From positions 62,001 through 126,000 of IMG/VR virus record IMGVR_UViG_3300017991_005548: a stretch of 64,000 bases of DNA, one strand, 5' to 3'. The stretch's first letter is position 1. Each line of letters begins with the position of its first letter. The notes beneath the pieces were generated by a model, which searched no databases, was not told the origin of the DNA, and was given only the letters and a program-made list of their open reading frames with translations. Below, in pieces: positions 7,452 to 41,698 of the stretch. A program made the position numbers and the translations under genes.

Positions 7452-7574
7452 GAAAAACGCCAGTGTATTGCTCATTTATACTACCTCACAAAGTTTAGAA
7501 TGCTGAATAGAACCTTATTCAAGTTCACTTTTAATAGTACTGTATGGGTGGGATTCGAACCCACATCTCTGGCT
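7452..7574 (-). ncRNA. circularly permuted tRNA-like RNA 1
   Basis: 3' half (GCCAG, AGAT, T arm GTGGG-TTCGAAT-CCCAC, CCATACA; 7540-7574) precedes 5' half (TGTGAGG, D arm, CTGGC; 7452-7490); linker holds the CAGCA element. Confidence 0.7.
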
Positions 7575-7650
7575 TGGTATCCCCAACGGGAATTGAACCC
7601 GTATCTGTTGGTTGAGAACCAACTATCCTAGACCGTTAGACGATGGGGAC
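7575..7650 (-). tRNA. tRNA-Glu(CTC)
   Basis: Loop TTCTCAA, CCA. Confidence 0.95.
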
Positions 7651-7657
7651 ATTAAAA

Positions 7658-7785
7658 ATGAGTCGGAAGGAATCGAACCTTCATTCCCTGGTTGATTTAT
7701 TAAACATCAAATAGTTGCTGGAACGAAACTTATACAGTTTCACTTGGTTTTATGTCCAGGAGTTCTACCATTAAACTACGACCCA
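7658..7785 (-). ncRNA. tRNA-like gene with CAGCAA element inside the anticodon arm
   Basis: Acceptor TGGGTCG/CGACTCA, D and T arms intact, stem CCTGG/CCAGG enclosing ~60 nt; no CCA. Confidence 0.7.
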
Positions 7786-7805
7786 AGTTGTATCTCTAAT
7801 GAGAT

Positions 7806-7882
7806 TGGTCGGGTATGCAGGATTCGAACCTGCGATCTCATCATCCCAAATGATGCGCCTTACCAGACTAGGCTAATACCCG
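7806..7882 (-). tRNA. tRNA-Pro(TGG)
   Basis: Loop TTTGGGA, CCA. Confidence 0.95.
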
Positions 7883-8055
7883 ATACAGAAGTGTTTTATC
7901 CTGTTAAACTATCCCCAACAAGATCGTACTTTAAGTCATCTGACACTAACTCATTTCTGACCCCAGAATATATTTTATTGTTTTGAATGTCAGTTCGTAA
8001 CAACTACTTTACACTCTTAAGCCGAGGCTGGGACTCGAACCCAGATCTCTCCTTT
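7883..8055 (-). ncRNA. circularly permuted tRNA-like RNA 2
   Basis: 3' half (AGGAG, AGAT, CTGGG-TTCGAGT-CCCAG, CCTCGGC; 8020-8055) precedes 5' half (GTTGGGG, D arm, CTTCT; 7883-7919) with ~100-nt linker. Confidence 0.7.
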
Positions 8056-8146
8056 TGGTGACGCAGACGGGATTCGAACCCGCAAAGGAATCTCTTCCTA
8101 CCAGATTGAAAGTCTGGTTACTTCAGGCCAATTTGTATACTGCGCC
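8056..8146 (-). tRNA. tRNA-Glu(TTC) with long variable arm
   Basis: CCAGA-CTTTCAA-TCTGG; V arm AGGAA-GAGA-TTCCT; CCA. Confidence 0.85.
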
Positions 8147-8152
8147 ATTTTT

Positions 8153-8273
8153 TAGTCAGGACGGCTGGATTCGAACCAACTCCTTTAGCTCCTCAAGCTA
8201 AAATAAATATTGCTGTAGCGAACCTTATTGTCAAGTTCATGTTTATAACGTGCTACCATTACACTACGTCCTG
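8153..8273 (-). ncRNA. tRNA-like gene (C1-G72 body, GAG anticodon) with CAGCAA element between D and anticodon arms
   Basis: CAGGACG/CGTCCTG acceptor, 47-nt insert after D arm, TTAGC-TTGAGGA-GCTAA, ends A-CTA. Confidence 0.7.
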
Positions 8274-8318
8274 ATGGTCTGACCCTCAAAAATCATAAGT
8301 CTGATTCTCGAAAAGTCA

Positions 8319-8397
8319 TGGTCTGGATGGTAGGATTCGAACCTACGCTACTCCTCAGTCCAAGTGAGGCGGGATGACCAGACTTCCCCACATCCAG
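8319..8397 (-). tRNA. tRNA-Pro(TGG)
   Basis: CCTCA-CTTGGAC-TGAGG, CCA. Confidence 0.95.
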
Positions 8398-8427
8398 ATT
8401 AAGTCTTCTAAATTTTCAAAGATCATT

Positions 8428-8503
8428 TGGTGACCCCAGTGGGAATCGAACCCAACCTTCCCAGGATGAAAACCTGGTGTCCTAGCCGATAGACGATGGG
8501 GCC
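8428..8503 (-). tRNA. tRNA-Glu(TTC)
   Basis: CCAGG-TTTTCAT-CCTGG, CCA. Confidence 0.95.
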
Positions 8504-8512
8504 ATGGACAAT

Positions 8513-8578
8513 AAAAAAGCCCTCCTAACGCAAGCTAAGAGGGCACAAAAAAAGCCCTCCCGCTCATGGCAGAAGGGC
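8513..8578 (-). terminator. two tandem intrinsic terminators of the Glu/Pro attenuator
   Basis: GCCCT...AGGGC+U7 (8547-8578) and GCCCTC...GAGGGC+U6 (8513-8544). Confidence 0.8.
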
Positions 8579-8600
8579 CAAAATCATAGTTATGATCTAA

Positions 8601-8678
8601 CTACAGATCGGCTGACCTCCTGCCAAAGGCTGGCGGTTCTTCTCGTTCTGGTTCTCGAATGTACATGTAGTTGTTCAT
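8601..8678 (-). CDS. Glu/Pro attenuator leader peptide MNNYMYIREPEREEPPAFGRRSADL
   Basis: 25 codons with GAA x4 and CCA/CCG x3; RBS AAAGGA. Confidence 0.8.
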   Translation of the reverse strand: MNNYMYIREPEREEPPAFGRRSADL

Positions 8679-8703
8679 AACAAATTTTCCTTTCGTTACC
8701 CCC

Positions 8704-8731
8704 ATTATAAACCATCCTAGAGACTTTTCAA
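8704..8731 (-). promoter_or_regulatory. promoter of the Glu/Pro tRNA operon
   Basis: TTGAAA-N16-TATAAT. Confidence 0.8.
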
Positions 8732-8815
8732 GTCGAATTTGAAAATTTTTAGCAAAGTAATAAAAATAAAACGATTATGGCGACTTCCATATATACTGGA
8801 TTACACCAGAAACAA

Positions 8816-9076
8816 CTAGTCTTGCTTAGAAATTGTCTCAACATCTATATAATTCTTCCCCGTTAAAATCCAATTCTTCACTAACTTTTGCAAACATCTT
8901 GAGCAAAGAGCCGCTTCCTCATCTTTGACATCAAAATTATTCAAAGAGATCTGAATACAGACTTTCTTCCCCTTATTGTCCATCTCTATAGTAAACTCTT
9001 GGTCACCAAGTACCCCCGTTTCTGGAGTTACTTGGCAACCACAAGAGTCACATAGATATTCTATCTTAATCGCCAT
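8816..9076 (-). CDS. hypothetical protein with CxxC pairs
   Basis: CDSC...CSRC. Confidence 0.6.
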   Translation of the reverse strand: MAIKIEYLCDSCGCQVTPETGVLGDQEFTIEMDNKGKKVCIQISLNNFDVKDEEAALCSRCLQKLVKNWILTGKNYIDVETISKQD

Positions 9077-9594
9077 TACTTCTGAAAAACTCTTGCTCTT
9101 TTGGCATGAGATTGTCTAGCGGCAACCATTCGTGGATCATCATCAGCCAAACTCAATCCTTGTTCTGCTCCCAAAAGGAAAGAGTCAACGACTTCACGGG
9201 CCAATTTATGATTTTCTCCCCATTCTGGGTTTGTGGCAAATAGAAGGTCAATACCATTCAAAAGAGCCAAAGAGCCTGCTAAGGCCAAAGGGCGTTCGTT
9301 TGGCTTAATTTTACCCTCTGCAACGGCTTTATCGAGGTAATCCTCAACAACAGGGAAAAGAACCTGGGTATAGGTTGCTCCTTGAGAGGTATCAGCGGTT
9401 ACACCTTTGATAACTCCAATAACTTCTTTTACAACTGCCATTTCTTCTGGAGTTGGGTCGTCATAAGCAACCCAGGTTACTGAGGCACCTAAACCTGCGT
9501 TCAGAGCTACTACTTTTGCTTGGCTTGGTGTACAACCAGTTAATGGGATCATCAACATGGCTACGATTGCGGTGAAAAACATACTTCTTTTCAT
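9076..9594 (-). CDS. putative lipoprotein
   Basis: Signal peptide with lipobox LTGC. Confidence 0.65.
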   Translation of the reverse strand: MKRSMFFTAIVAMLMIPLTGCTPSQAKVVALNAGLGASVTWVAYDDPTPEEMAVVKEVIGVIKGVTADTSQGATYTQVLFPVVEDYLDKAVAEGKIKPNERPLALAGSLALLNGIDLLFATNPEWGENHKLAREVVDSFLLGAEQGLSLADDDPRMVAARQSHAKRARVFQK

Positions 9595-10112
9595 TTCAAG
9601 TTCTCCTTATTTTTGGTTAATTTTACTGAAATAAATCTTGGTTCATCTTTTCTACTAGTGACAGTCGCAAAATCAGAGCATTTTTCTACAATTTCGTCCA
9701 TTTTGCTCTTCGCAACATTAATATTTACTCTACGTCTGATCTTCATGGTGAAATGAAGTTCATGGCCATGATCAATAAACTCTTGAGCGTGTTTCATTTT
9801 ATGCTCAACATCATGATCGTCAATCGAAGGAGTAAAACGTATCTCCTTCATCTCATGTTTTTGATCTTTTTGTTGCTTCTTTTGTTTTTTACCTTTTTGA
9901 TATTTCCACTTACCGTAATCAATCAACTTACATAATGGGTTGTTCTTCTCGGTTTCCCCAGAGAAACAAACTAGGTCTAAACCTTTGTCCTGAGCTATCT
10001 CAATAGCATCAAGTGTTTTGATTTCTCTGTGAAATTTGTTATTTTCATCAACCAAATCAAGAATGACGAAGCTTTTGCTGTCAACGACCAAGAACGGTTC
10101 CATGGACTTCAA
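9591..10112 (-). CDS. infC: translation initiation factor IF-3
   Basis: AQDKGLDLV...CKLIDYGKWKYQ...KEIRFTPSIDDHD signature. Confidence 0.9.
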   Translation of the reverse strand: MKSMEPFLVVDSKSFVILDLVDENNKFHREIKTLDAIEIAQDKGLDLVCFSGETEKNNPLCKLIDYGKWKYQKGKKQKKQQKDQKHEMKEIRFTPSIDDHDVEHKMKHAQEFIDHGHELHFTMKIRRRVNINVAKSKMDEIVEKCSDFATVTSRKDEPRFISVKLTKNKENLK

Positions 10113-10123
10113 TGGTGTCCCTC

Positions 10124-10381
10124 CTATTTTGTGTAGTAATCTTTCATTTCTTTGATTAAGACTTCCAATTTCTCCTGATAAGCCTTCATTTCGACTATGT
10201 TGTTCCTCAGAAGAACGGCGTTGCCTTTATCTAAATACAACCTATCACCCTCTTTTTCAAACGCTGGTTGCGTTAAAACAGGTTTCTCAGGCATAACCCA
10301 TGCTTTACCAACTGGATTCGTATGATGACATCCAGTGAAGACAAACAAACTAAAACATGCTATTAAGATCGTCTTGTACAT
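10124..10381 (-). CDS. small lipoprotein (possible o-spanin)
   Basis: Lipobox FTGC, Pro-containing N-region, coiled C-terminus; overlaps upstream ORF. Confidence 0.5.
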   Translation of the reverse strand: MYKTILIACFSLFVFTGCHHTNPVGKAWVMPEKPVLTQPAFEKEGDRLYLDKGNAVLLRNNIVEMKAYQEKLEVLIKEMKDYYTK

Positions 10382-10568
10382 CGTCTAAATCCTCACTCTC
10401 TTTCTGCTCTTCCTTCTCTTCATCAATTTTATCATATTCTTCTTTCAGTGTCTCTTGAATTTCCTGGGCCTGAGCTTCTTGCTCTTCTTTCTCTTCCTTC
10501 TTCTTAGTAAAGAAGTAATCGAGAATAGTTTTGATAAGATCCCATAAACTCGTTCCTTTTTTACCCAT
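10350..10568 (-). CDS. acidic coiled-coil small protein
   Basis: ORF track, RBS GGAGG. Confidence 0.5.
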   Translation of the reverse strand: MGKKGTSLWDLIKTILDYFFTKKKEEKEEQEAQAQEIQETLKEEYDKIDEEKEEQKESEDLDDVQDDLNSMF

Positions 10569-10618
10569 GATATAGTCCCTCCAAATAGTTCTACCAGACT
10601 CTTTCTGAAAAATTGTTT

Positions 10619-10984
10619 TTAATCCTCTGCATTTTCCGACAATTTATTCACCTGAAGAACTACAGTATGTCTAGGTCTCCACCCAACAGTTTTTGCCGCC
10701 AGAATAGCTGATTTAGCTTTCACTTCAACTATTTGATCAGTTCTTTTATTTCTAATAACATAAGAGGTATCTATTTCATCCTTCTTATTATCGTATTTGC
10801 TTTTCTTCATGGCTTTGAATTCTTTGGCCCCTACGTGGACTTCAGGTTCCTTATCGACCTTTTTCGTAGCGTCAAGCAAATCGTTTTTTCTGAGAGAGTC
10901 AACAAGTTTTTTCGATACATTCTTATCCATCGGTATAAGCCTCAAAATTAAGATCTTCAAAGCAGAAGCCAAGAAGGGGTTCAA
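10619..10984 (-). CDS. hypothetical protein
   Basis: ORF track, in - strand gene run. Confidence 0.55.
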   Translation of the reverse strand: MNPFLASALKILILRLIPMDKNVSKKLVDSLRKNDLLDATKKVDKEPEVHVGAKEFKAMKKSKYDNKKDEIDTSYVIRNKRTDQIVEVKAKSAILAAKTVGWRPRHTVVLQVNKLSENAED

Positions 10985-11348
10985 TTAGCTCATCCAGAGG
11001 AACATTATTTTTTCTAGCTTTTTCTCTGATGTTATGAGCAAACATATTAGCGGACTCAACGAAGTTTTTTAATTCTTCGATATTATTGGATTCCAAAGTG
11101 CCAATCCATGTTGCTATTGGCTGATTGCAGGAACATTTGATTACACAACTTCCATGAACATGATCTACTTCCAATTCAAGGAACTCAAACTCAGTGCAAT
11201 CTTCTAAATGTTGTTTAATATCTTCTTCGAAACTCATGAGAATTGAACTTTTTTCTTTGAAATAATAGACTTTGTGCAAAAATGTATTTATATCGATAAT
11301 CCCTTCTGCACGTAATTTAATAAGACGATCTAATTCTTTAGAGTCCAT
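10923..11348 (-). CDS. hypothetical protein
   Basis: ORF track. Confidence 0.5.
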   Translation of the reverse strand: MDSKELDRLIKLRAEGIIDINTFLHKVYYFKEKSSILMSFEEDIKQHLEDCTEFEFLELEVDHVHGSCVIKCSCNQPIATWIGTLESNNIEELKNFVESANMFAHNIREKARKNNVPLDELIEPLLGFCFEDLNFEAYTDG

Positions 11349-11370
11349 TATAGCTGTTTTGAAAATGTTT

Positions 11371-11712
11371 TCAAGTTTCGTTGCTTCTTACCCATTCAGG
11401 CACTTCGCCTTCTTCCCAACGGATAGCTCTGTCCAAATCTTCTTGAGTGGGCATCAGAATATTGTTTGATATCATATAATTCTGCCAATCTTCCCCAAAC
11501 TGTTCTCGGCATAAAGCTTGACCCCAATCAAACAACTCTCCTGAAATTGAGTAAACGGTATTCCCATGTTTCTCATTCATTCTCTTGACCCATTCAAAAA
11601 CACCTAATACTACTTGTTTTTGCTGTTCTTCGAGACTCATTTGATCTACTGCTTCTTCTACTACCTCATTTGATTCTTGAGTAATGTCCATTTTTTCCTC
11701 AATGGTTTTCAA
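11371..11712 (-). CDS. hypothetical protein
   Basis: ORF track. Confidence 0.6.
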   Translation of the reverse strand: MKTIEEKMDITQESNEVVEEAVDQMSLEEQQKQVVLGVFEWVKRMNEKHGNTVYSISGELFDWGQALCREQFGEDWQNYMISNNILMPTQEDLDRAIRWEEGEVPEWVRSNET

Positions 11713-11749
11713 ATCAATTTGTTTTTTATTATACAGTCGATTTTCTCCA

Positions 11750-11853
11750 AAACAGTTTTTAAACGGTTTTAAACTGTTTATAAATGCAATTTCAGGTCGG
11801 TTGGTAAGTGTACACTCCCCCTATAGCAGGAAGGAGGAGTAATACACTTACCA
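11750..11853. repeat. palindromic AT-rich repeats plus long inverted repeat
   Basis: AAACAGTTTTTAAACGGTTTTAAACTGTTT; TGGTAAGTGTA (11802-11812)/TACACTTACCA (11843-11853). Confidence 0.6.
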
Positions 11854-11876
11854 GAGGCAGTTTATAACTGCAATTT

Positions 11877-12133
11877 CCAGTATAGGCAGTTTCATGTCAC
11901 GATAGTGTTGAGGACTGGATTACCTCGGGTAGGTTAGCGGTCACCACTACACTATACTCCCAGAATAAAATTCTCTAACGGTCGGCTTAAAGCTCGGTCA
12001 CTTTTCGTTTTAGCGCCATATTCATTGCTTCCTGGGCTTTACCCGTCTCGGAACCCAGCCCCTAGCCAACTAACCTAGAATAGTCAATCTGACTGGGGTA
12101 CAGCGCCCTACCGTATCAATCCATTTCGGTAGG
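11877..12133 (-). ncRNA. candidate structured ncRNA
   Basis: ORF-free, GC-enriched; helices CCTACCG/CGGTAGG, TAGGTTAGT/GCTAACCTA, CTGGG/CCCAG. Confidence 0.4.
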
Positions 12134-12175
12134 ATTTTGAATATTTCTGCTGATTTTAGTCTGGTAGTATTTTAG

Positions 12176-28834: not shown

Positions 28835-28925
28835 TGGTGGGAGTAGCAGGACTTGAACCTGCGTTTACCTTTCGGCCTCCTGTGTATCAGACAGGCGCTC
28901 TAACCAAATACTGAGCTATACTCCC
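28835..28925 (-). tRNA. tRNA-Ile(GAT) with long variable arm
   Basis: Loop CTGATAC; V arm GCC-GAAA-GGT; CCA. Confidence 0.85.
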
Positions 28926-32563: not shown

Positions 32564-33997
32564 TTAGACGGTGACCCCTTCTGGGACTACGATTTCATAC
32601 TTCTCGATTGCTCGATCAAGTACTGCCATTGGCGAGAAATCAGTGCCTCCGAGAACTGCGCCTAAGATTGAAGGACTGAAGCCACTTACAAGAGCAACAT
32701 TCTCATGCGTACCTCTTGCAGGACTTCCTGCATATCCAGCAGTATTCCAATATACAATCTTTGGACGACTGTATCCATTTGCTTCCCACTCTTCCATGCA
32801 TCTTTCAATAGTGGTCTTATCGCAGTTACTAGCGCCAGAGCACCAGCCTCCACCATTATCGAACTGCATGTCTGAAATGATCAACAGACAGTTTGGAATC
32901 TGTTCATCAGTTACGTTGAACATCTTTGCAGAGTTCAGGATCTGATCAAGAGCCGCCTTGACGTTCGTTGATCCACAATATCCTTCTCTTCTGCAACGCT
33001 GAATTCCCTGAACAAAAGTCTTTCCCTTCCAATCGACAAGGTGACTGTCGTTTGAGAATGGAATGAACTTCCTGTAGAAAGGGTTATCCTTTCCAACCCT
33101 GTCAGAGCAGTACAATCCCAAACTGGTTGAGATATCAATAGCTCTGATAGAACCAGAGACAGTAACTCCCATAGATCCAGAGAAGTCACAAATTGGCATG
33201 ATTCTCATGTTGCAGTCTTCCATGAAGTTTGGAAGAGCTTCAAACTGAGCATTTGCCAACTTACCATCCTTGTTAGCAGTACGAAGAACGTCATGTGGGA
33301 ACAAAGCACTTGCGTTAACCTTGTTGTCAGAGTCCTCGTCAGTCAAAGACTCTCTCCACTGATCGTATCTTGCAGGATCATGCTTCAAGAATGCGTTAGC
33401 AGATCTTGCCATTGCGACAGAAGGAACAGTGTTGTAGTCAATGTCATGCCAGTCGCCTGAGCACATTGCAGTCTCTACAACATTAGTGTACTCAGCCAAG
33501 TGCTTTCTGAATACCTTTGGAGACATTCCGAGAGCCTTTCTAAGCTTTGCGAAAACAACCTTGTTCTTCTTCTCTCTTGGTGCCCACTTGCAAGCAAGAC
33601 CATGCTTATCAGCAATAGCTCTTGCCCAGTACTGGATTGCAGTATCTTCGCAAGGAGTATCGATACATGCAGTCAAGTCATCCCAACGTCCAGTCTCTGG
33701 AATAAGATGAATATTGACAGTAATCCACTCAGGATGCTTCTCAGCCATCCACTTCAATACAGAACGGAATCCGCTTCTGTTACCTGCTCCACCTCTAGCA
33801 TCACGAAGCCAGAAAGCAAGCTTTGCGGCACGAAGTTGATCGGACTTGAACGCAGGCTTAAACAAGTTCAGAGCACCTGCCTCCGAACCGTAGTAGCTAC
33901 CACGCTTCTCGAAAAGTGATCCTGCCTTGGAGAAGAACTCCAAAAGTGCGTTTCCAGTTGAGTCATACAGAAAGTCGTTGTTGTGTCCTCTTGCCAT
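32564..33997 (-). CDS. TROVE-like/DUF2828 family protein with vWA domain
   Basis: FWLRDARGGAG.R..FR, GRWDDL, KWAPRE, DFSGSM MIDAS, ISDMQFD, IVYWN. Confidence 0.8.
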   Translation of the reverse strand: MARGHNNDFLYDSTGNALLEFFSKAGSLFEKRGSYYGSEAGALNLFKPAFKSDQLRAAKLAFWLRDARGGAGNRSGFRSVLKWMAEKHPEWITVNIHLIPETGRWDDLTACIDTPCEDTAIQYWARAIADKHGLACKWAPREKKNKVVFAKLRKALGMSPKVFRKHLAEYTNVVETAMCSGDWHDIDYNTVPSVAMARSANAFLKHDPARYDQWRESLTDEDSDNKVNASALFPHDVLRTANKDGKLANAQFEALPNFMEDCNMRIMPICDFSGSMGVTVSGSIRAIDISTSLGLYCSDRVGKDNPFYRKFIPFSNDSHLVDWKGKTFVQGIQRCRREGYCGSTNVKAALDQILNSAKMFNVTDEQIPNCLLIISDMQFDNGGGWCSGASNCDKTTIERCMEEWEANGYSRPKIVYWNTAGYAGSPARGTHENVALVSGFSPSILGAVLGGTDFSPMAVLDRAIEKYEIVVPEGVTV

Positions 33998-34028: not shown

Positions 34029-34094
34029 AAAAAAAAGACCAGTCAAACTTGGTTCCGAGTCCCATCTCGCGTATGGAACAAAGTCTAACTGGTC
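34029..34094 (-). terminator. long terminator-like hairpin just upstream of the TROVE-like gene
   Basis: GACCAGTTAGACTT/AAGTTTGACTGGTC + U8. Confidence 0.7.
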
Positions 34095-34111: not shown

Positions 34112-34459
34112 CAGGTTAGCAATTTTGGTTTTCATTTCAAGTGAAAGTTTTGGTTGCTGTAACTAACCTTCTATCCTAAATTAAAAATTTGAACAGACTG
34201 ACTTGTTTTTTTTAGCATAAAAAATTTTGAGTTGCTGAATGCAGTCTTATATCAAATTGTTTTTCTAAATTTTCCTTTTTCTTGTTTTCAAAGAAACAAG
34301 TGAAACAGCTTGGGTTTTCCATCCTTTATTTCAGACCTCGATGAATTTGGGTCCTCAAATTTATTTTTAAAACCCTCTCGACTGGGTTCTCGTTTTATTT
34401 CTGTCAGGGCGACTCTGACGCTCGTTTTATCGTGTTTTTTGGTTGCAGTAACCAAGCTT
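34112..34459 (-). ncRNA. structured leader with three CAGCAA elements and anticodon-loop mimics
   Basis: AAG-N8-C(A/T)GCAA at 34154-70, 34232-48, 34443-59, each closed by a helix+CTG; TTTCA-CTTGAAA-TGAAA and T6-ATGCTAA-A6 hairpins. Confidence 0.7.
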
Positions 34460-34477: not shown

Positions 34478-34505
34478 ATTATAAGGATTACGAAAAACTT
34501 TTCAA
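34478..34505 (-). promoter_or_regulatory. promoter of TROVE leader
   Basis: TTGAAA-N16-TATAAT. Confidence 0.8.
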
Positions 34506-35407: not shown

Positions 35408-35409
35408 TC

Positions 35410-36554: not shown

Positions 36555-36872
36555 CTATGGTATGATGATCCCTCCTTTTCTTTTGTCGTTAGGAGTGACT
36601 ATCGTACTCTGTTGTTCTTTCAATTTTTCGATAGCTTCTTGTTGAGCCTCGTCTCTCAACCGATCATACTCTTCTTCAGCGAATTTCTGAAAATCTTCGA
36701 AGCACTGCTCAAGAGTATACCCTTCTGGGAATTCAAAGTTTTGTGGATCTCCCCCATATGGAGTTGGAATGATGAACATCCCGATGAACTGAGGTTCACC
36801 TTCTCCAACGGGGAATTTGCCAACTAACTGCTTCCCGTCGTCGTCCACGAATTGTTTAATTTCGTAGATCAT
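36555..36872 (-). CDS. hypothetical protein
   Basis: ORF track. Confidence 0.55.
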   Translation of the reverse strand: MIYEIKQFVDDDGKQLVGKFPVGEGEPQFIGMFIIPTPYGGDPQNFEFPEGYTLEQCFEDFQKFAEEEYDRLRDEAQQEAIEKLKEQQSTIVTPNDKRKGGIIIP

Positions 36873-37222
36873 ACCCCAATCCCCAGAGTCTCTTCAAGAT
36901 CCATGACAACGTCTCCACTGTCATTCCAGGAATTGACGACTTTGCTCTGGATGTTTCTCAGAGCAGGCAACGGAAGGTTCTCAATGTTGACCATATGAGG
37001 AACAACCATTACCTTAACCCCAGTTACTCCTTCGAAAAGTTCGTTTACCGTTTCGGCAACTCTTTCCATGTCGGACTTTGTTGCTGGAGTCTTTTCATTG
37101 CCAACCGTGACAATCAAAAGAGATCCGTCTTCGACATTTGGGAACACCTGGGTTTTGAGTGTTTCCAGATCTCGATCCATCTGTCCACTCGTTTCTTTTT
37201 TTACAGTCTCTTTCTTTGACAT
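36869..37222 (-). CDS. hypothetical protein
   Basis: ORF track, RBS AAGGAG. Confidence 0.55.
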   Translation of the reverse strand: MSKKETVKKETSGQMDRDLETLKTQVFPNVEDGSLLIVTVGNEKTPATKSDMERVAETVNELFEGVTGVKVMVVPHMVNIENLPLPALRNIQSKVVNSWNDSGDVVMDLEETLGIGV

Positions 37223-37263
37223 TGTCTTGCTCCTTAGTTAGACTTAAGAACGATGATATTTAT

Positions 37264-37291
37264 AGTATAGACCGAAAAAACAATAAATCAA
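37264..37291 (-). promoter_or_regulatory. sigma70-like promoter
   Basis: TTGATT-N16-TATACT. Confidence 0.55.
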
Positions 37292-37773
37292 GGGCGAGTA
37301 TGCAAAATAACTTGTTCGATCAACCTTTCTATGGAAGTTTCTGGCAACCTTCTCCTTTCCTTTTTATAAAGAAAATCAAGGTATCTCGTTTTTGGTGCAT
37401 TATCTGGACGACCATAAAAGAAGTTCTCAGATCCTACATGTAACCCAAATTCAACATTGGTTGTAAACGCTGGCATTGTTTTAAGTTCTCTAGGAACCCA
37501 CGCAAGTATGGCTCCAAATTCTCGACAATGCGCTAAAGCCCTATATTCCCAATAAACTTGTTTGTGATAGTCAAAGGTGTCATCACCCTCTTTTTCTCGT
37601 GGTTCAGGGACATAGAGAACTCCATCGAATTCATGCTGTTTAAAAATATCGATAGCATTTGGCCTCCATGACTGCACATCAATGCTTCTTGGAGATGGCC
37701 CGACTAAAAACACAGGTTTTGATATACCTCTGATATCCTCTTGAATTGGTTCTCTTGCATAAACTACTTTCAT
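37288..37773 (-). CDS. nucleoside 2-deoxyribosyltransferase-like protein
   Basis: VFLVGP..R...SWR; QV.WE; AWVPR...TTNVEFG. Confidence 0.75.
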   Translation of the reverse strand: MKVVYAREPIQEDIRGISKPVFLVGPSPRSIDVQSWRPNAIDIFKQHEFDGVLYVPEPREKEGDDTFDYHKQVYWEYRALAHCREFGAILAWVPRELKTMPAFTTNVEFGLHVGSENFFYGRPDNAPKTRYLDFLYKKERRRLPETSIERLIEQVILHTRP

Positions 37774-38093
37774 TGTATCTCTCCTTTATTCTTACACTCC
37801 ATGTTTTTAACAGTGAAGATTTCATATCTAATGCTAAGGATGATGTTAAACTGGCTACAAACGTCTATTAATTCTTCATCCATTGGAAAGTCAGGAATTT
37901 CTTCCCCTTCTGGCAATGCACTTATCCAATCTTCTGCTTTTTTGACCCATTCATTCGCCATATGTAAGTTTGTAAATGTTCCCACTTTCCAAGTAGTGAA
38001 GCTATTAGTACCAGAAACGGTGCCCTCAACAAGATAGACATTATTAACGTCTTCAAGATTATGGTGACTTAATAGAGTGGGTTTAATTTTCAT
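37770..38093 (-). CDS. hypothetical protein
   Basis: ORF track. Confidence 0.5.
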   Translation of the reverse strand: MKIKPTLLSHHNLEDVNNVYLVEGTVSGTNSFTTWKVGTFTNLHMANEWVKKAEDWISALPEGEEIPDFPMDEELIDVCSQFNIILSIRYEIFTVKNMECKNKGEIQ

Positions 38094-38121
38094 TGTAATA
38101 CTCTAAATTTTATTGCAAAAC

Positions 38122-38327
38122 TCCAAGCTCATAGGCAGGATTCTGTTTAATATTTTCCATCATTTATCTATTGGCATCAACCCGACCATTATAGAGTAGC
38201 TCACCCTCTAGGTCTGTTTGAATTGCAACCTCGGTAGTGCAAACGAATCTCTTCTCCTACCTTAAGCTAAGTTGTCCTGACCTTCCTCTCATGAGCATTA
38301 CCTCGTAGAGCGATGGATCGGCTTGAA
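38122..38327 (-). ncRNA. rnpB: minimal RNase P RNA
   Basis: CR-I GAGGAAGGTCAGGA (38275-88), CR-IV AGATAAAT (38162-69), CR-V ACAGAATCCTGCCTA (38132-46); P4 AGGTCAGGA/TCCTGCCT, P1 TCAAGC/GCTTGG, P2 TCCATCG/TGATGGA. Confidence 0.85.
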
Positions 38328-38333
38328 AATGTT

Positions 38334-38765
38334 TTATCCTGGCCAAGGCCAAGACATAGTTAAGTGTATTGAATACATAAATCCGCCACCATCCTTAACG
38401 GCGGAATATATAAAGGGGAAAGGCTTCTTTTTAATGTCTGCGATGGCTTCCTCAAGATAAGCGATAACCTCTTCCTCAGCCTTATTATCTCCAAGTTCTT
38501 TCCGCTTTTCGTGCCAACGAATCTGATCCCTATTTGGAACAATCCGAATAAACATGTCAGCAGGAATCCTGTCCTCATTACTACAGAACTCAGTCTTAAC
38601 CCCAATTTTCTTTTCGTTGGCTTTCTTAATAAAATCTAGGATTTCTGCTTCAGTCATCTCCATAACTTCAGACATCCCAAAATCTTCTTCTGGAATGCCA
38701 AGTGACTCTAGGATATGGACATCCTCTGCAATTGCGTGAAAAACGACTTTCATTGATGGCTCCAA
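38334..38765 (-). CDS. hypothetical protein
   Basis: ORF track. Confidence 0.55.
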   Translation of the reverse strand: MEPSMKVVFHAIAEDVHILESLGIPEEDFGMSEVMEMTEAEILDFIKKANEKKIGVKTEFCSNEDRIPADMFIRIVPNRDQIRWHEKRKELGDNKAEEEVIAYLEEAIADIKKKPFPFIYSAVKDGGGFMYSIHLTMSWPWPG

Positions 38766-39155
38766 TTATTTCTGTTTTCTACCAAGCAGTTTTTTAGTCT
38801 TCTTTTCCAAATCGTTGAGTTCAGAGAGCATTTTATCTCTTTCTTTACCTTTTTTGTTGGCTCTAACCTCACGTTTCATCCTACGGATTTCAGCAAGTGC
38901 TGATTTGAGTCTGTCTTCATTGGTTTTTTCTTCAGGCTCTTCGTCAAGAGCTTCGTCTATATCATCCAAAAATTTATCAATGATATGTTCAGTATCTCCT
39001 GCCTTGTTAGCCCACTGTATAACGAGTTCTGTTGCAGTGAAGTTGAATTCATCCATAATTCCATCTATGCCAAACTCGTTGTAAGTTTCTTCTATGTTTT
39101 GGGCAATTTTCGGAGAGCATTCGTTTTTGATCAAGAATTTATATAAGCTTTTCAT
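38766..39155 (-). CDS. hypothetical protein
   Basis: ORF track. Confidence 0.55.
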   Translation of the reverse strand: MKSLYKFLIKNECSPKIAQNIEETYNEFGIDGIMDEFNFTATELVIQWANKAGDTEHIIDKFLDDIDEALDEEPEEKTNEDRLKSALAEIRRMKREVRANKKGKERDKMLSELNDLEKKTKKLLGRKQK

Positions 39156-39607
39156 CTGTTTTGCTCAATGTATTTTTTCTTGTATCTCAGTGCTACTTCG
39201 CGAGTAGTAGGAATTATTTCCCTGTTCCCTTCATTCTTTAATTTCTTGTATCCTGTTCCCCATCCCTCTTCTGCGAGGCCACATTCTCTGCAAGATCTAA
39301 AAGGAGGTCTATGAGAATGATAATCACTGCTTTTCGCTTCAGCTTCTAAAACTAATTCATGAGGACATTTGTCCATATAAGCTTCTTCAGCTTTTATTCT
39401 GAGTTCAGTCAAGGATTTTAATCTGCGTCCCACTTGGTCAATTTTGTCTTGGACTTGTTGAATGAGAGCCTTTTCAACTGCACCATCACTGATTGCTTCT
39501 TGAACAGTCGATCCTAAGTCTGCAATACTTTGGATTTCTTCTGCTTCTTCGTCTTCGCACCACATTGGGTCAGGATCTGTATCAATCATTTCATTATTTA
39601 TGGACAT
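39152..39607 (-). CDS. hypothetical protein with Zn-finger-like motif
   Basis: CPH...CRECG. Confidence 0.55.
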   Translation of the reverse strand: MSINNEMIDTDPDPMWCEDEEAEEIQSIADLGSTVQEAISDGAVEKALIQQVQDKIDQVGRRLKSLTELRIKAEEAYMDKCPHELVLEAEAKSSDYHSHRPPFRSCRECGLAEEGWGTGYKKLKNEGNREIIPTTREVALRYKKKYIEQNR

Positions 39608-39637
39608 AGTCTACCTCATCGATTGTTGGTTAGACTT

Positions 39638-39729
39638 TGGCGGAAGGAGAGGGATTTGAACCCTCGTGCCCCTTTCAGGACCAACCGCTTTCCAGGCGGT
39701 GACGATTAACCAGACTCCGTCATCCTTCC
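39638..39729 (-). tRNA. tRNA-Ser(GGA)
   Basis: Loop CTGGAAA, long V arm, G73 CCA. Confidence 0.95.
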
Positions 39730-39735
39730 ATATTT

Positions 39736-39993
39736 TTATTTTTCATCTTGGGTTTTCGTTTCCCCTACTTTGATCAGATGTCTTGGGTTAACTAAAACAA
39801 GATAATTTTTAAGTACACAATATCCATTATCCAACATATACTCAATTTCATACATGGTGTTTATACTCATACTCCAAATACCTGCACCATGCCAGTCTTG
39901 ATATTTTTGGGGGCGTTTAACAACATCCCCAATTTTCAAGCCGTTAGGATTGCAAACATCTGCCAGTTCAAGATCCGTTCTTTTCATCTTCAA
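39736..39993 (-). CDS. hypothetical protein
   Basis: ORF track. Confidence 0.5.
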   Translation of the reverse strand: MKMKRTDLELADVCNPNGLKIGDVVKRPQKYQDWHGAGIWSMSINTMYEIEYMLDNGYCVLKNYLVLVNPRHLIKVGETKTQDEK

Positions 39994-40246
39994 GTTCCTT
40001 GTTGATGAAATTCTTTAACACTGCATTGAACCCAATAGAGACAAGTTCTGAAAGCTCGTCCTCTGTTAAATCATGGGTTCTGACCCCCTCAATATTTTCT
40101 GATGCTTTTACAGCAACAACAGGAAGTCCACTCTCTTTTATTAAATCTTTTAGTGCAATAAGTATTAACGTATCGATCTCTCCTTCAGTAAGATCGATCT
40201 TAAATGGTTCGCCTGCTTCAAGTTTTTCTGGTTCAAGAATTTTCAT
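39968..40246 (-). CDS. hypothetical protein
   Basis: ORF track. Confidence 0.5.
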   Translation of the reverse strand: MKILEPEKLEAGEPFKIDLTEGEIDTLILIALKDLIKESGLPVVAVKASENIEGVRTHDLTEDELSELVSIGFNAVLKNFINKELEDEKNGS

Positions 40247-40473
40247 CGTTTAATTACCTTCTCAGGCATTTCATCTCTTTTGTTCACAACCATGTACTTC
40301 CCATTGCCCTCAAAAATAACAGAAAGACCGCCATTTATTAGCTTAGCTGTTTCGCATTTGATCATTTCTGCCCCATCTTTTCTTTTGATCATCTCCCCAA
40401 CATACTCTTCCTGTACTTTTTGATTGATAAAATCTGTTAGATTCATATATCTACCTTTTATTTGGCTCTTCAA
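40243..40473 (-). CDS. hypothetical protein
   Basis: ORF track. Confidence 0.45.
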   Translation of the reverse strand: MKSQIKGRYMNLTDFINQKVQEEYVGEMIKRKDGAEMIKCETAKLINGGLSVIFEGNGKYMVVNKRDEMPEKVIKR

Positions 40474-40678
40474 TCACCATTATACAGCCAAGATTAGTAT
40501 CAAAGTAACTAAGTCCATATTCTTCCAGAACTTCTAGGACCAGTTCCCTCATTTTAAGGGAATTTCCTGTAACAACCTCAAAAGGAGGGTCATAATTAAA
40601 AATATGAGAGTCAAGTAAAGACCGAACATCTTGATGCTTAACCCCATGTAAATCTAACTTCATTTTCCGTGTAACCAA
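40451..40678 (-). CDS. Smr-domain-like small protein
   Basis: LDLHG...VVTGNS motif. Confidence 0.6.
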   Translation of the reverse strand: MVTRKMKLDLHGVKHQDVRSLLDSHIFNYDPPFEVVTGNSLKMRELVLEVLEEYGLSYFDTNLGCIMVIEEPNKR

Positions 40679-41325
40679 CCCTTCCGATTATGAGTCTCTT
40701 TCATTTGAACCTCTTCGGAAGGGACATAAAGACAGTGGTCCTGGATATATCGTTGAACTTCTTCGTCCAAATATGGCAAAAAGTCTGATCTGCCATGTTT
40801 TTTGAAGTGATCTCTTGCCATAGTAGACGAACATTCGGTAATTTTGTCTTCTACGTCCAAGAAAAGATGGGGAGGATTCTTATACCATCGATATTTCTTC
40901 TTCAATTCGATTCCACTTCTTGTTACAACAACAAATTTGGCAATTTCCCGTAATTTTTTGAAATTATGCCAGTTAATGAAGTTGTTTACGTTGTCAGCAC
41001 CAATGATAAAACTGATATCAACATCAAGTTGTGGGTCTTTGAGGAGGGTTTGGACTAATTCGAAGGTCGAACCACTCAGTTCATGTCTAATTTCGTAATC
41101 AAATACATGAAGTTTCGGATTTTTTCTGCAAGCGATAGCGCACATCCTGAGTCTGTGTAAATTAAGCTCTAAATTCTTACCAAATCGATGTTTATTGCAA
41201 GGCAAGAGCCAAACTTCATCAAATTTTCCTTTTTCAAGGACAAATTCAGCTACTTGTATATGAGCAAGTGTTGGGGGATTGAAAGCCCCGCCAAGAATGG
41301 CAATTTTAGTCATAGTTTTCTCCAA
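40660..41325 (-). CDS. nadD: nicotinate/nicotinamide mononucleotide adenylyltransferase
   Basis: GGAFNPPTLAH, FIIGADN...W, CSSTMAR. Confidence 0.9.
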   Translation of the reverse strand: MEKTMTKIAILGGAFNPPTLAHIQVAEFVLEKGKFDEVWLLPCNKHRFGKNLELNLHRLRMCAIACRKNPKLHVFDYEIRHELSGSTFELVQTLLKDPQLDVDISFIIGADNVNNFINWHNFKKLREIAKFVVVTRSGIELKKKYRWYKNPPHLFLDVEDKITECSSTMARDHFKKHGRSDFLPYLDEEVQRYIQDHCLYVPSEEVQMKETHNRKGWLHGK

Positions 41326-41331
41326 TGATTT

Positions 41332-41419
41332 TGGCGGAAGAGGTGGGATTCGAACCCACGGATGCTCTCACATCAACGGTTTTCAAGACCGCCGCCTTCG
41401 ACCTCTCAGCCACTCTTCC
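41332..41419 (-). tRNA. tRNA-Ser(TGA)
   Basis: Loop CTTGAAA, long V arm, CCA. Confidence 0.95.
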
Positions 41420-41428
41420 AAATTTTGA

Positions 41429-41562
41429 TGGACAAGACGGGATTCGAACCCGCAAATCGAGATGCCTCACCCATTGCTTAGGAGAAAAATAACTCCTGCC
41501 CATGGTAGCGACATTACTCTTAAGACCAGAGCCTCAACTTTGCCAATTTAAGTTACTTGCCC
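41429..41562 (-). ncRNA. tRNA-like RNA with branched ~75-nt insert replacing the anticodon loop
   Basis: GGGCAAG/CTTGTCC acceptor, D arm, T arm GCGGG-TTCGAAT-CCCGT; two inserted hairpins; no CCA. Confidence 0.65.
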
Positions 41563-41576
41563 GTCTTGTCAAATTT

Positions 41577-41698
41577 TGGCGGATGAGGTAGGATTCGAAC
41601 CTACACTGTAGCGGTTTCTGTTTTTTGGTTGCTGAAGAGAACCTTTTTGTCAAGTTCATTTTTTGGACCGCCGTCTCTGCCAGTTGGACTACTCATCC
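41577..41698 (-). ncRNA. tRNA-like gene with CAGCAA element in the anticodon loop
   Basis: GGATGAG/CTCATCC-GCCA; stem GCGGT/ACCGC encloses 51 nt. Confidence 0.75.

What the first reader, a model, noticed from the sequence alone, without database searches (positions are those of the whole stretch)
7500..41658. Seven-copy RNA element (helix-YTG ... AAG-N8-CAGCAA) in two topologies
AAG + exactly 8 nt + C(A/T)GCA(A/T) occurs on the - strand at 7500-16, 7715-31, 8210-26, 34154-70, 34232-48, 34443-59 and 41629-45. In every copy the first 4-5 nt of N8 pair with a strand followed by CTG/TTG, with compensatory changes (GTTC/GAAC, TTTC/GAAA, ACTG/CAGT, GTTAG/CTAAC, CTTGG/CCAAG). In the TROVE leader the element encloses cargo hairpins. 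In four tRNA-like genes it is circularly permuted, a hairpin inserted in the tRNA. Covariation plus permutation implies an RNA structural module such as a protein-binding site (the TROVE/DUF2828 protein is a candidate), a processing signal or a small ribozyme. I do not recognise it as a named family.
Basis: partly seen in the sequence, partly recalled or inferred. Interest (0 to 1): 0.86.

Follow-up and report, generated by a model that had tools for sequence, protein, structure and literature searches.

The report
Phage Y-like RNAs for Ro60-like protein
The seven repeats are real copies of a small RNA module that travels with a Ro60-shaped phage protein in many phages, is built either into free small RNAs or into tRNA look-alikes, and closely resembles a class of amoeba RNAs thought to be unique to social amoebae.

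Summary
All seven copies lie on the minus strand at the stated coordinates. Only these seven of the 11 motif matches also have the paired strand followed by YTG.

The module is a 7-bp helix. One end is fixed (A.G, A-U, G-C). Five base pairs covary. The 5' strand continues with (U)UA and CAGCAA.

It is not private to this phage. A covariance model built from 21 copies found 136 matches next to DUF2828/DUF7788 genes in 82 of 170 independent loci. All 136 were on the gene strand.

The window's DUF2828 protein is predicted to fold as Ro60 (TROVE ring plus vWA domain).

Best reading: these are Y-RNA-like partner RNAs of a phage Ro60 paralogue.
- Three are free RNAs in a promoter-to-terminator leader.
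- Three sit in tRNA-shaped RNAs as a circular permutation of YrlA.
- One sits in an atypical RNA with a T arm and a D arm.

The permuted form also occurs in KVP40-like and Aeh1-like phages, where it is annotated as a pseudo-tRNA or an intron-containing tRNA.

No Rfam family reaches its threshold. The Dictyostelium Class I RNA model, however, hits exactly these elements eight times (best 36.1 bits).

Protein binding is inferred, not shown. I rate this a new variant of a known kind.

The parts
34306..34459 (-). Free Y-like RNA 'G'. It has the form AAG-CUUGG-UUA-CUGCAA ... CCAAG-CUG(UU) and encloses about 130 nt of cargo hairpins. It is the first RNA after the promoter.
34194..34248 (-). Free Y-like RNA 'F', 55 nt. 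It has the form AAG-ACUG-CAUU-CAGCAA ... CAGU-CUG(UU).
   Evidence: My model R1 scores it 51.0 bits. Rfam RF01414 scores it 20.6 bits.
34112..34170 (-). Free Y-like RNA 'E', 59 nt. It has the form AAG-GUUAG-UUA-CAGCAA ... CUAAC-CUG(UU) with one small cargo hairpin.
   Evidence: R1 scores it 52.3 bits. RF01414 scores it 22.9 bits.
34478..34505 (-). Sigma-70-like promoter (TTGAAA, 16-nt spacer, TATAAT; 11 of 12 positions) lying about 20 nt upstream of RNA G.
   Evidence: This is a consensus match only.
34029..34094 (-). Long hairpin followed by U8, an intrinsic-terminator-like element. It lies between RNA E and the ribosome-binding site of the DUF2828 gene.
   Evidence: folding energy -28.3 kcal/mol, z-score -5.9. 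It also gives a weak Rfam Y_RNA hit of 16 bits, E 2.8.
32564..33997 (-). Gene for a 477-aa DUF2828 + DUF7788 protein with a predicted Ro60 fold (HEAT-repeat ring plus vWA domain with a DxSxS motif). It is the presumed protein partner.
   Evidence: Pfam. PHROG 850 'RNA-binding protein'. AlphaFold2 model with pLDDT 85. The top 11 Foldseek PDB hits are all Ro60. Invariant D271, S273 and S275.
41580..41698 (-). tRNA-shaped RNA 'D'. It has an acceptor stem, D arm, T arm and an encoded CCA. The anticodon loop is replaced by a 53-nt insert carrying the module as a closed hairpin (41629-41657).
   Evidence: Rfam tRNA 36.8 bits. Sequence..
8156..8273 (-). tRNA-shaped RNA 'C' with the module hairpin at 8210-8238 in the anticodon position, followed by an extra hairpin.
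   Evidence: Rfam tRNA 45.6 bits..
7658..7785 (-). tRNA-shaped RNA 'B'. A 5-bp anticodon stem (CCUGG/CCAGG) encloses a 64-nt insert with the module hairpin at 7715-7741.
   Evidence: Rfam tRNA 46.7 bits..
7459..7573 (-). Atypical RNA 'A'. An outer stem (GCCAG/CUGGC) is followed by a T arm, a long arm carrying the module hairpin (7500-7526, with CAGCAU) and a D-arm-like hairpin. This would be a third connectivity and is the least certain part.
   Evidence: The constrained fold gives -23.0 kcal/mol against an unconstrained minimum of -24.3. Neither ARAGORN nor Rfam calls it a tRNA.

Best explanation
The seven copies are the protein-recognition module of phage Y-RNA-like small RNAs. These RNAs are the presumed partners of the Ro60-fold protein (DUF2828 + DUF7788) encoded at 32564-33997.

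The module is a 7-bp helix.
- The outer end is fixed: an A.G apposition, then A-U, then G-C (G.U in the UUG copies).
- The inner five pairs are free to vary as long as they pair.
- The 5' strand runs on into 3-4 single-stranded bases (UUA or AUU) and the hexamer C-N-G-C-A-A.

By analogy with Ro60 and Rsr, which read mainly the 5' strand of a terminal helix of Y RNA, I infer that the protein ring docks on this helix and hexamer. The rest of the RNA is cargo that tethers other factors or gates the ring.

Three RNAs (G, F, E) would be made from one promoter in the leader of the protein gene and end at a terminator-like hairpin.

Three others (B, C, D) are tRNA-shaped RNAs inside tRNA clusters, with the module closing the anticodon arm. 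This is YrlA (a Y RNA with a tRNA-like domain) circularly permuted: the acceptor stem is open and the protein-binding helix is closed. RNase P and 3' trimming would then release them like their tRNA neighbours.

What is shown: the structure, the covariation, the linkage to the gene, and the predicted protein fold.

What is inferred: binding, the RNA ends, and the downstream function.
For: 1. Copies and pairing in the window.

2. Covariation. In 21 aligned short elements the 7 pairs are 99.3% paired, against 27-42% when the partner columns are slid. The covariation score is 0.77 against 0.195 in shuffles (0 of 500 reach it). The fifth variable pair was not required by my filter and still pairs in 19 of 20 sequences, with four pair types. 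The same holds for 74 distinct matches found by the model.

3. Linkage to the gene.
- The strict descriptor found 43 elements in 30 of 80 IMG/VR DUF2828 loci. All were on the gene strand, with none on the opposite strand or in reversed sequences.
- Model R1 found 78 matches in 47 of 90 phage loci and 58 matches in 35 of 80 bacterial or archaeal assembly loci.
- All 136 matches are on the gene strand, and most lie close upstream or downstream of the gene.
- The set includes phages of E. coli (Alf5), Listeria, Staphylococcus, Enterococcus, Bacillus and Campylobacter.

4. Protein. The AlphaFold2 model has pLDDT 85 and pTM 0.86. Its 11 best PDB matches are all Ro60, Rsr or Thermus phage phiLo Ro60, with E 6e-8 to 1e-5 and TM-score 0.4-0.6.

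5. Link to YrlA.
- A mycobacteriophage DUF2828 locus has a stem-NNN-CAGCAA ... stem element whose interior is hit by Rfam YrlA at 39.8 bits (E 1.3e-5 in the four-locus scan; 1.4e-7 in the 321-nt rescan; sequence).
- Alf5 and an Enterococcus phage have elements that enclose a T arm, a closed acceptor hairpin and a D arm.

6. The permuted form recurs with compensatory stem changes in Aeh1-like Aeromonas phages and in 49 KVP40-like Vibrio phage records.

7. Precedents from the literature.
- M. smegmatis YrlA is cut by RNase P in its acceptor stem, gains CCA, and stays bound to Rsr (PMC4201824).
- Thermus phage phiLo Ro60 binds two phage Y-like RNAs and host PNPase (PMC12135203).
Against: - No binding, expression or RNA-end data exist for any member.
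- The hexamer CAGCAA is not the GNCGAAN0-1G or GGUCCGA motif of known Ro60 and Rsr partners.
- Rfam YrlA and Y_RNA do not reach threshold anywhere in the window. The best scores are 16.6 and 16 bits.
- The protein matches Ro60 only by predicted fold, at 12-16% identity. A sequence profile found no PDB chain at E below 0.01.
- About half of the DUF2828 loci show no element within 2.5-3 kb.
- Copy A fits the scheme only loosely.
- Linkage to the gene would also be expected for a cis-regulatory site.
Confidence: 0.75

Rival explanations
1. The module is mainly a cis-acting operator. The DUF2828 protein, or another factor, binds its own mRNA leader to control translation or read-through. Under this view the copies elsewhere are secondary.
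For: - In the window the three leader copies lie between a promoter and a terminator-like hairpin just before the gene.
- In KVP40 a stem-UUUA-CAGCAA element pairs across the ribosome-binding site and start codon of the gene.
- In several IMG/VR loci a 34-38 nt element ends directly at the ribosome-binding site.
Against: - Many copies lie downstream of the gene, or in tRNA clusters kilobases away: 7.5-8.2 kb and 41.6 kb in this window, and about 2.7 kb downstream in Aeh1 (L012). In KVP40 and Aeh1 relatives the copies sit in pseudo-tRNA pairs.
- Loci often hold 2-5 copies.
- Some copies enclose a complete tRNA-like domain, as trans-acting YrlA does.
- This reading is compatible with the main explanation as an added autoregulatory role.
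Confidence: 0.1
2. B, C and D are true tRNA genes interrupted by a small protein-dependent intron, and the module marks the cleavage sites. After excision and ligation (for example by RtcB) functional tRNAs would result.
For: - GenBank annotators called the Aeh1 and PX29 homologues tRNA-Val and tRNA-Leu, the latter as two joined pieces.
- A Listeria phage has an RtcB ligase gene 1.3 kb from its DUF2828 gene.
- rsr is linked to rtcBA in Salmonella (background from PMC7790460, listed).
Against: - None of B, C or D would leave a canonical 7-nt anticodon loop with U33 next to the stem (read).
- C has no clear anticodon stem.
- The same module forms free RNAs with no tRNA body.
- Known bacterial and phage tRNA introns are group I introns, which are far larger (my own background knowledge).
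- KVP40 annotators called its copies pseudo-tRNAs.
Confidence: 0.06
3. The module binds some other protein, from the host or the phage (for example an RRM-type, Hfq-like or tRNA-processing protein). Under this view the DUF2828 gene is only a neighbour in the same operon.
For: - The look-alike Dictyostelium Class I RNA was shown to bind an RRM protein, Rnp1A, directly (PMC7919456).
- No binding data exist for DUF2828.
Against: - The only gene consistently next to the element across unrelated phage lineages is DUF2828. The flanking genes differ between lineages.
- That protein is predicted to have the fold of a known Y-RNA-binding ring.
Confidence: 0.07
4. The module is a small self-cleaving ribozyme or a nuclease processing signal.
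For: - The conserved AAG and CUG(U) flanks coincide with the mature ends of the look-alike Class I RNAs.
- The free copies must somehow be released from longer transcripts.
Against: - No ribozyme family matched in any Rfam scan.
- The conserved part is one helix plus about 9 unpaired bases.
- The flanks are equally conserved where a 2-5 nt loop joins them. This argues that they are part of the recognised structure rather than cut sites.
Confidence: 0.02

Closest known systems
Bacterial and phage Y-RNA-like RNAs (YrlA and YrlB, Rfam RF02553; Chen et al. 2014, PMC4201824; Thermus phage phiLo Yrl1 and Yrl2, PMC12135203)
   Same: - They are encoded beside a Ro60-fold protein gene, on the same strand, and often in several copies.
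- A terminal helix is followed on the 5' strand by a short conserved single-stranded motif.
- At least one RNA per genome carries a tRNA-like domain with T arm, D arm and acceptor.
- A mycobacteriophage member of the present family is hit by the YrlA model at 39.8 bits.
   Different: - The partner protein is DUF2828/DUF7788, not Pfam TROVE.
- The motif is (U)UA-CNGCAA with fixed A.G, A-U and G-C base pairs, instead of GNCGAAN0-1G.
- No window copy reaches the YrlA threshold.
- In B, C and D the RNA is circularly permuted, with the acceptor open and the protein-binding helix closed.
Dictyostelium Class I RNAs (Rfam RF01414; Kjellin et al. 2021, PMC7919456)
   Same: - Both begin with AAG, and that G pairs with the C of a 3'-terminal CUG(U).
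- Both have a short terminal stem whose sequence varies with compensatory changes.
- Both have the motif (C)UUACAGCAA directly after the 5' strand.
- Both have an A/U-rich variable middle, a length of about 60 nt, and genes in clusters.
- RF01414 hits eight phage elements end to end, at 20.6-36.1 bits. The best has E 0.0018 after correction for all 4227 families in a 30-kb search.
   Different: - Class I RNAs are eukaryotic, transcribed from DUSE promoters, and reported as unique to Dictyostelia.
- Their known direct binder is the RRM protein Rnp1A.
- The phage copies have one base fewer between stem and hexamer.
- All phage copies score below the Rfam gathering score of 41.5.
- No tRNA-embedded form is described in amoebae.
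- Whether dictyostelids encode a DUF2828 protein could not be checked here.
Metazoan Y RNAs (Rfam RF00019)
   Same: They are small RNAs whose terminal helix is bound by a Ro60 ring, with a variable loop as cargo.
   Different: - The window has no bulged GGUCCGA/UUGAC helix in the module.
- Metazoan Y RNAs have no tRNA-like domain.
- The only hit in the window is 16 bits, on the terminator hairpin.
'Pseudo-tRNAs' and 'intron-containing tRNAs' annotated in KVP40, Aeh1 and PX29
   Same: These are the same objects as B, C and D: tRNA bodies with a 50-60 nt insert in the anticodon position that carries the module.
   Different: They were annotated as defective or interrupted tRNAs. In the papers I could search they were not linked to the DUF2828 gene or to Y RNAs.

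Membership tests
Y-RNA-like RNAs of Ro60/Rsr (YrlA class) | Encoded within a few kb of a Ro60-type protein gene, on the same strand | tested here: met
   The three leader copies lie 115-460 nt upstream of the gene. All 136 model matches in 170 loci are on the gene strand.
Y-RNA-like RNAs of Ro60/Rsr (YrlA class) | A conserved Ro-binding motif (GNCGAAN0-1G or GGUCCGA) near the 5' end, in a helix formed by the RNA termini | tested here: not met
   A helix in the equivalent position is present, but the motif is (U)UA-CNGCAA. The published motif is taken from PMC4201824.
Y-RNA-like RNAs of Ro60/Rsr (YrlA class) | A tRNA-like domain (T arm, D arm, acceptor) in at least one RNA of the genome | tested here: met
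   B, C and D score 36.8-46.7 bits with the Rfam tRNA model, but in permuted connectivity.
Y-RNA-like RNAs of Ro60/Rsr (YrlA class) | Reaches the Rfam RF02553 gathering score of 69 bits | tested here: not met
   The best score in the window is 16.6 bits. A related mycobacteriophage copy scores 39.8 bits.
Y-RNA-like RNAs of Ro60/Rsr (YrlA class) | Physically bound by the Ro60-type protein | not testable with these tools
   This needs EMSA, RNA immunoprecipitation or a structure.
Dictyostelium Class I RNA (RF01414) | A short stem joining the 5' and 3' ends, with compensatory changes; AAG at the start and CUGU at the end | tested here: met
   E, F and G all read AAG-stem ... stem-CUGUU. The true RNA ends are not mapped.
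Dictyostelium Class I RNA (RF01414) | The 11-nt motif CCUUACAGCAA next to the 5' stem strand, with invariant T3, C6, C9, A10 and A11 | tested here: met
   E has UUACAGCAA, F has AUUCAGCAA and G has UUACUGCAA. There is one base fewer between stem and hexamer.
Dictyostelium Class I RNA (RF01414) | Reaches the Rfam gathering score of 41.5 bits (the authors' own working cut-off was 25) | tested here: not met
   In the window the scores are 22.9 and 20.6 bits. The best related locus scores 36.1 bits.
Dictyostelium Class I RNA (RF01414) | A DUSE promoter about 60 nt upstream, in a dictyostelid genome | tested here: not met
   The source is a phage contig. A sigma-70-like promoter serves an operon of three RNAs.
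tRNA (RF00005), for B, C and D | Cloverleaf with acceptor, D and T arms, scoring above 29 bits | tested here: met
   Scores are 46.7, 45.6 and 36.8 bits.
tRNA (RF00005), for B, C and D | A 7-nt anticodon loop with U33 and an anticodon | tested here: not met
   The anticodon position holds a 53-64 nt insert. ARAGORN calls none of the three.
Ro60 / TROVE proteins, for ORF 32564-33997 | A ring of HEAT-like repeats plus a C-terminal vWA domain with a DxSxS MIDAS motif | tested here: met
   The predicted fold matches 1yvr, 2nvo, 9l5y and 9kop. D271, S273 and S275 are invariant.
Ro60 / TROVE proteins, for ORF 32564-33997 | Sequence match to Pfam TROVE, or to solved Ro60 chains | tested here: not met
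   Pfam reports only DUF2828 and DUF7788. The profile search against PDB sequences gave no hit at E below 0.01.
Small self-cleaving ribozymes | Match to a known ribozyme family | tested here: not met
   No such hit appeared in any Rfam scan.

The most novel reading that the evidence does not exclude
The Class I RNAs of dictyostelid social amoebae have been reported as unique to that group, and their function has been unknown since 2004. Under this reading they belong to the same RNA class as these phage elements. They would then be Y-like RNAs whose terminal helix plus UUACAGCAA is the docking site of a Ro60-fold protein of the DUF2828 type. Either they were acquired together with such a protein from bacteria or phages, or both descend from an old Ro-like ribonucleoprotein. 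DUF2828 proteins, which number at least 4,476 clusters here and also occur in plants (noted in the Aeh1 record's annotation), would thereby gain a first functional assignment.
Probability: 0.3. Interest if true: 0.85.

Novelty: new variant of a known kind. Interest (0 to 1): 0.7.

Why it matters
- DUF2828/DUF7788 is a very large phage protein family with no assigned function. I found 695 phage records and at least 4,476 protein clusters, including model phages such as KVP40, Felix O1-like phages, and Listeria, Staphylococcus and Enterococcus myoviruses. This finding gives it a fold (Ro60) and a candidate RNA partner with a clear, testable recognition code.
- It reinterprets the 'pseudo-tRNAs' and 'intron-containing tRNAs' of T4-like Vibrio and Aeromonas phages as permuted tRNA-mimic Y RNAs.
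- It shows that the same protein-binding module works in at least two RNA connectivities.
- It offers a concrete, checkable hypothesis for the unexplained Class I RNAs of Dictyostelium.
- Phage Ro60 particles have been proposed to capture host PNPase. These RNAs may therefore bear on how phages manage host RNA decay and tRNA-directed defences.

Tried and rejected
- **Viral-contig scan for the window's stem.** I scanned for GAACTTG..AAGGTTC..CAGCAW. Only the window's own two contigs gave genuine copies. The five other hits lie in apparent coding sequence and have no tRNA context.
- **Permuted copies near other DUF2828 genes.** None were found within 3 kb of the gene in the 80 IMG/VR loci. The permuted form turned up only through Aeh1 and then by similarity search.
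- **Rfam.** No family reaches its gathering score except tRNA. YrlA and Y_RNA give only weak hits in the window.
- **PDB sequence-profile search with the protein alignment.** No hit. The fold search was needed.
- **Eukaryotic DUF2828 homologues.** The large protein search listed only phage-like proteins among its best 120. Whether Dictyostelium has a homologue stays open.
- **Literature.** The supplement of Chen 2014, two Wolin reviews and Avesson 2011 are not held. I therefore could not check the published phage list or the four Class I RNA-binding proteins.
- **Promoter reading of TTGACA in copies C and D.** Rejected. D has no -10 element at the right spacing, and the TTG is part of the paired flank.
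- **Copy A as a plain tRNA with insert.** Rejected, because its T arm precedes its D arm.

Full report

The pattern AAG-N8-CWGCAW occurs 11 times in the window, against 2.9 expected. None of 100 shuffles reached 11.

The first four or five bases of N8 must be complementary to a strand that is followed by YTG. Exactly the seven named copies pass and the other four motif matches fail.

- Three copies (34170, 34248, 34459) have the partner strand 48-146 nt downstream.
- Four copies (7516, 7731, 8226, 41645) have it 10-12 nt upstream, forming closed hairpins with 3-5 nt loops.
- The Rfam tRNA model scores three of the hairpin-bearing regions above threshold, with a large insert: 7658-7785, 8156-8273 and 41580-41698.
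- The fourth (7459-7573) has a T arm and a D-arm-like hairpin in swapped order and is not called a tRNA.

**2. What surrounds it?**

The window comes from a jumbo phage. Identical loci lie on IMG/VR contigs of 296 and 476 kb. It carries 34 tRNA genes, all on the minus strand.

The three linear copies lie in a 460-nt leader.
- A sigma-70-like promoter (TTGAAA, 16 nt, TATAAT) is at 34505-34478.
- RNAs G, F and E follow.
- A long hairpin with a U8 tail comes next (-28.3 kcal/mol, z-score -5.9).
- The ribosome-binding site and start of a 477-aa ORF follow.

That ORF matches Pfam DUF2828 and DUF7788 and PHROG 850 'RNA-binding protein'. An AlphaFold2 model built on 15 homologues has pLDDT 85 and pTM 0.86. 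Its 11 best PDB matches are all Ro60 proteins: Xenopus Ro, Deinococcus Rsr and Thermus phage phiLo Ro60. They align over the whole length with E between 6e-8 and 1e-5. The vWA-type DxSxS motif is invariant in the family.

**3. Is the element tied to that gene elsewhere?**

Yes. The protein has full-length homologues in 695 phage records and in at least 4,476 protein clusters.

- In 80 IMG/VR loci centred on homologues, the strict descriptor found 43 elements in 30 loci. Every one was on the gene strand. None was found on the opposite strand or in reversed-sequence controls.
- I built a covariance model (R1) from 21 short elements. It found 78 matches at E of 0.1 or better in 47 of 90 phage loci.
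- In a second, independent set it found 58 matches in 35 of 80 loci from bacterial and archaeal assemblies.
- All 136 matches are on the gene strand. Most lie close upstream or downstream of the gene.

The lineages are unrelated: Felix O1-like Escherichia phage Alf5 (four copies among tRNAs next to the gene) and phages of Listeria, Staphylococcus, Enterococcus, Bacillus and Campylobacter. The other flanking genes differ between them.

**4. Anatomy**

Forty-seven distinct linear elements give this consensus: (a/u)AAG-R-N-U-N-N-(n)-U-(A/U)-CAGCAA-a ... N-N-A-N-Y-CUG-(u/a)u.

The helix has seven pairs.
- A-U and G-C are fixed at the outer end, and an A faces the final G.
- Five inner pairs vary.
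- On the 21-sequence alignment 99.3% of cells pair, against 27-42% when the partner columns are slid.
- The fifth variable pair was not required by my filter. It still pairs in 19 of 20 sequences using AU, GC, CG and UA.
- Results were the same on 74 distinct model matches.

In the T4-like phages the second base of the hexamer takes all four values, so the hexamer is C-N-G-C-A-A.

Lengths run from 34 to about 250 nt. The interior is A/U-rich filler, hairpins, or in some cases a tRNA-like domain.

**5. Relation to Y RNAs**

Ro60 and Rsr proteins bind Y RNAs through a terminal helix, reading mainly its 5' strand. Bacterial YrlA RNAs add a tRNA-like domain (PMC4201824).

- In a mycobacteriophage whose 'Ro-like' protein is DUF2828-type, three elements of the form stem-NNN-CAGCAA ... 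stem follow the gene. The interior of the middle one is hit by Rfam YrlA at 39.8 bits.
- Alf5 and an Enterococcus phage have elements that enclose a T arm, a closed acceptor hairpin and a D arm in the YrlA order.

The family is therefore the Y-like RNA partner of the DUF2828 branch of Ro60-fold proteins. Its motif, CNGCAA, differs from the published GNCGAAN0-1G.

**6. The permuted form**

In B, C and D the order is: acceptor 5' strand, D arm, (anticodon stem), partner strand-YUG, loop, AAG-strand, N3-4, CAGCAA, linker, T arm, acceptor 3' strand. This is the YrlA order opened at the acceptor stem and closed at the protein-binding helix.

It is not a quirk of this phage.
- Aeromonas phage Aeh1 and its relatives carry two adjacent tRNA-shaped genes with the module in the anticodon position, as do 49 KVP40-like Vibrio phage records. 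The stems are CAUU/AAUG, GAUU/AAUC, GAAU/AUUC, AAGU/AUUU, AAUA/UAUU and CAAG/CUUG.
- These genes are annotated as tRNA-Val, as tRNA-Leu joined from two pieces, as tRNA-Pseudo-5, as tRNA-OTHER, or as hypothetical proteins.

A precedent for an open acceptor end exists. M. smegmatis YrlA is cut by RNase P in its acceptor stem, receives CCA, and stays bound to Rsr as two halves. The permuted phage RNAs would be a single-chain version of this. They would be released from tRNA operons by the ordinary tRNA-processing enzymes. That last step is inferred.

**7. Resemblance to Dictyostelium Class I RNA**

An E-value scan of the leader gave Rfam RF01414 as the best two hits. They span E and F end to end, at 22.9 and 20.6 bits.

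Treating this as a hypothesis, I scanned ten further loci. RF01414 hit six more elements and nothing else.
- L088 and L072 scored 24.4 bits each.
- L074 4392-4454 scored 36.1 bits, with E 0.0018 after correction for 4,227 families and 30 kb, or 1.6e-5 in a 261-nt rescan (alignment).
- L082, L016 and a second L074 element scored 22.6-23.9 bits.

The published description of Class I RNAs matches feature by feature (PMC7919456):
- a start at AAG;
- a 5' G pairing with the C of a terminal CUGU;
- a short stem with compensatory changes;
- the motif CCUUACAGCAA next to the 5' strand;
- a variable middle;
- a length of about 60 nt;
- clustered genes.

That paper reports the class as unique to Dictyostelia and does not mention Y RNA, Ro60 or TROVE. 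All phage scores are below the Rfam gathering score of 41.5, so I do not file the phage elements as members. The shared signature itself is statistically real. Whether it reflects common descent, a shared kind of protein partner, or convergence is open. I could not determine whether dictyostelids encode a DUF2828 protein.

**8. Mechanism, with status of each step**

Shown:
- a conserved helix-plus-hexamer RNA module;
- its strict linkage to DUF2828 genes, on the gene strand;
- two connectivities, plus possibly a third;
- a predicted Ro60 fold for the protein.

Inferred:
- The protein binds the module.
- The free RNAs are cut out of the leader or tRNA-cluster transcripts.
- The tRNA-shaped ones are matured like tRNAs.
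- The particle acts like the Ro60/Y RNA/PNPase machines of Deinococcus, Salmonella and Thermus phage phiLo (PMC4201824, PMC12135203), with the cargo domain tethering or gating.

A secondary autoregulatory role is plausible. In KVP40 such an element pairs across the ribosome-binding site and start codon of the gene, and in several loci a short element abuts the ribosome-binding site.

**9. Novelty and verdict**

Y-like RNAs next to phage Ro60 homologues are known. The following were not found in Rfam or in the searchable literature:
- this motif;
- its tie to the DUF2828 branch;
- the permuted tRNA-embedded form as a Y RNA;
- the Class I RNA resemblance.

I rate it a new variant of a known kind, with interest 0.7. 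My confidence in the Y-like, protein-binding reading is 0.75.

Noticed in passing
window 41429-41562 (-): A 134-nt tRNA-shaped RNA (Rfam tRNA 34.6 bits) with a structured insert of about 60 nt in the anticodon and variable region. It has no CAGCAA module. It lies between tRNA-Ser 41332-41419 and RNA D.
   Followed up: partly
window 8056-8146 (-) and 28835-28925 (-): tRNA-Glu(UUC) and tRNA-Ile(GAU) are each 91 nt long and carry a long extra arm. By my own background knowledge, long extra arms are normally found in Ser, Leu and Tyr tRNAs, so this is unusual.
   Followed up: partly
window 7885-8055 (-): The spacer between tRNA-Glu and tRNA-Pro folds with an outer stem, a T arm first and a D-arm-like hairpin last, like RNA A, but it has no CAGCAA hexamer. 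It may be a degenerate or different Y-like RNA.
   Followed up: no
window 7300-8520 (-): Glu and Pro tRNA genes alternate through this stretch, with a Y-like or tRNA-like RNA in most of the gaps between them. In phage Alf5 the DUF2828 gene is likewise followed by tRNA-Pro, tRNA-Glu and then the elements.
   Followed up: partly
window 34033-34094 (-): The terminator-like hairpin before the DUF2828 gene gives a weak Rfam Y_RNA hit (16 bits, E 2.8). Its 3' strand ends in UUGACUGGUC followed by a U run, which by my recollection resembles metazoan Y RNA 3' ends. The hit is not significant.
   Followed up: partly
L003 2927-2973 (KVP40, AY283928.2): A stem-UUUA-CAGCAA element whose 3' strand includes the AUG of the DUF2828 gene and which encloses its ribosome-binding site. 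This suggests translational autoregulation.
   Followed up: partly
L007 5788-6999 (Listeria phage LP-083-2): An RtcB-like RNA ligase gene lies 1.3 kb downstream of the DUF2828 gene. This echoes the rsr-rtcBA linkage in Salmonella.
   Followed up: no
L044 2982-3017: A sub-threshold Rfam DUF805b RNA hit (30.1 bits against a gathering score of 35.6) overlaps the start of a DUF2828 homologue.
   Followed up: no
L084 3001-4428: This DUF2828 homologue has two in-frame stop codons. It could be a pseudogene, a sequencing error or an alternative genetic code. I did not examine it.
   Followed up: no
window 4130-5149 (-), 46211-49578 (-): A LAGLIDADG homing-endonuclease ORF lies near the tRNA-Phe pair. 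DnaJ-like and ClpB-like chaperone genes are also encoded by the phage.
   Followed up: no
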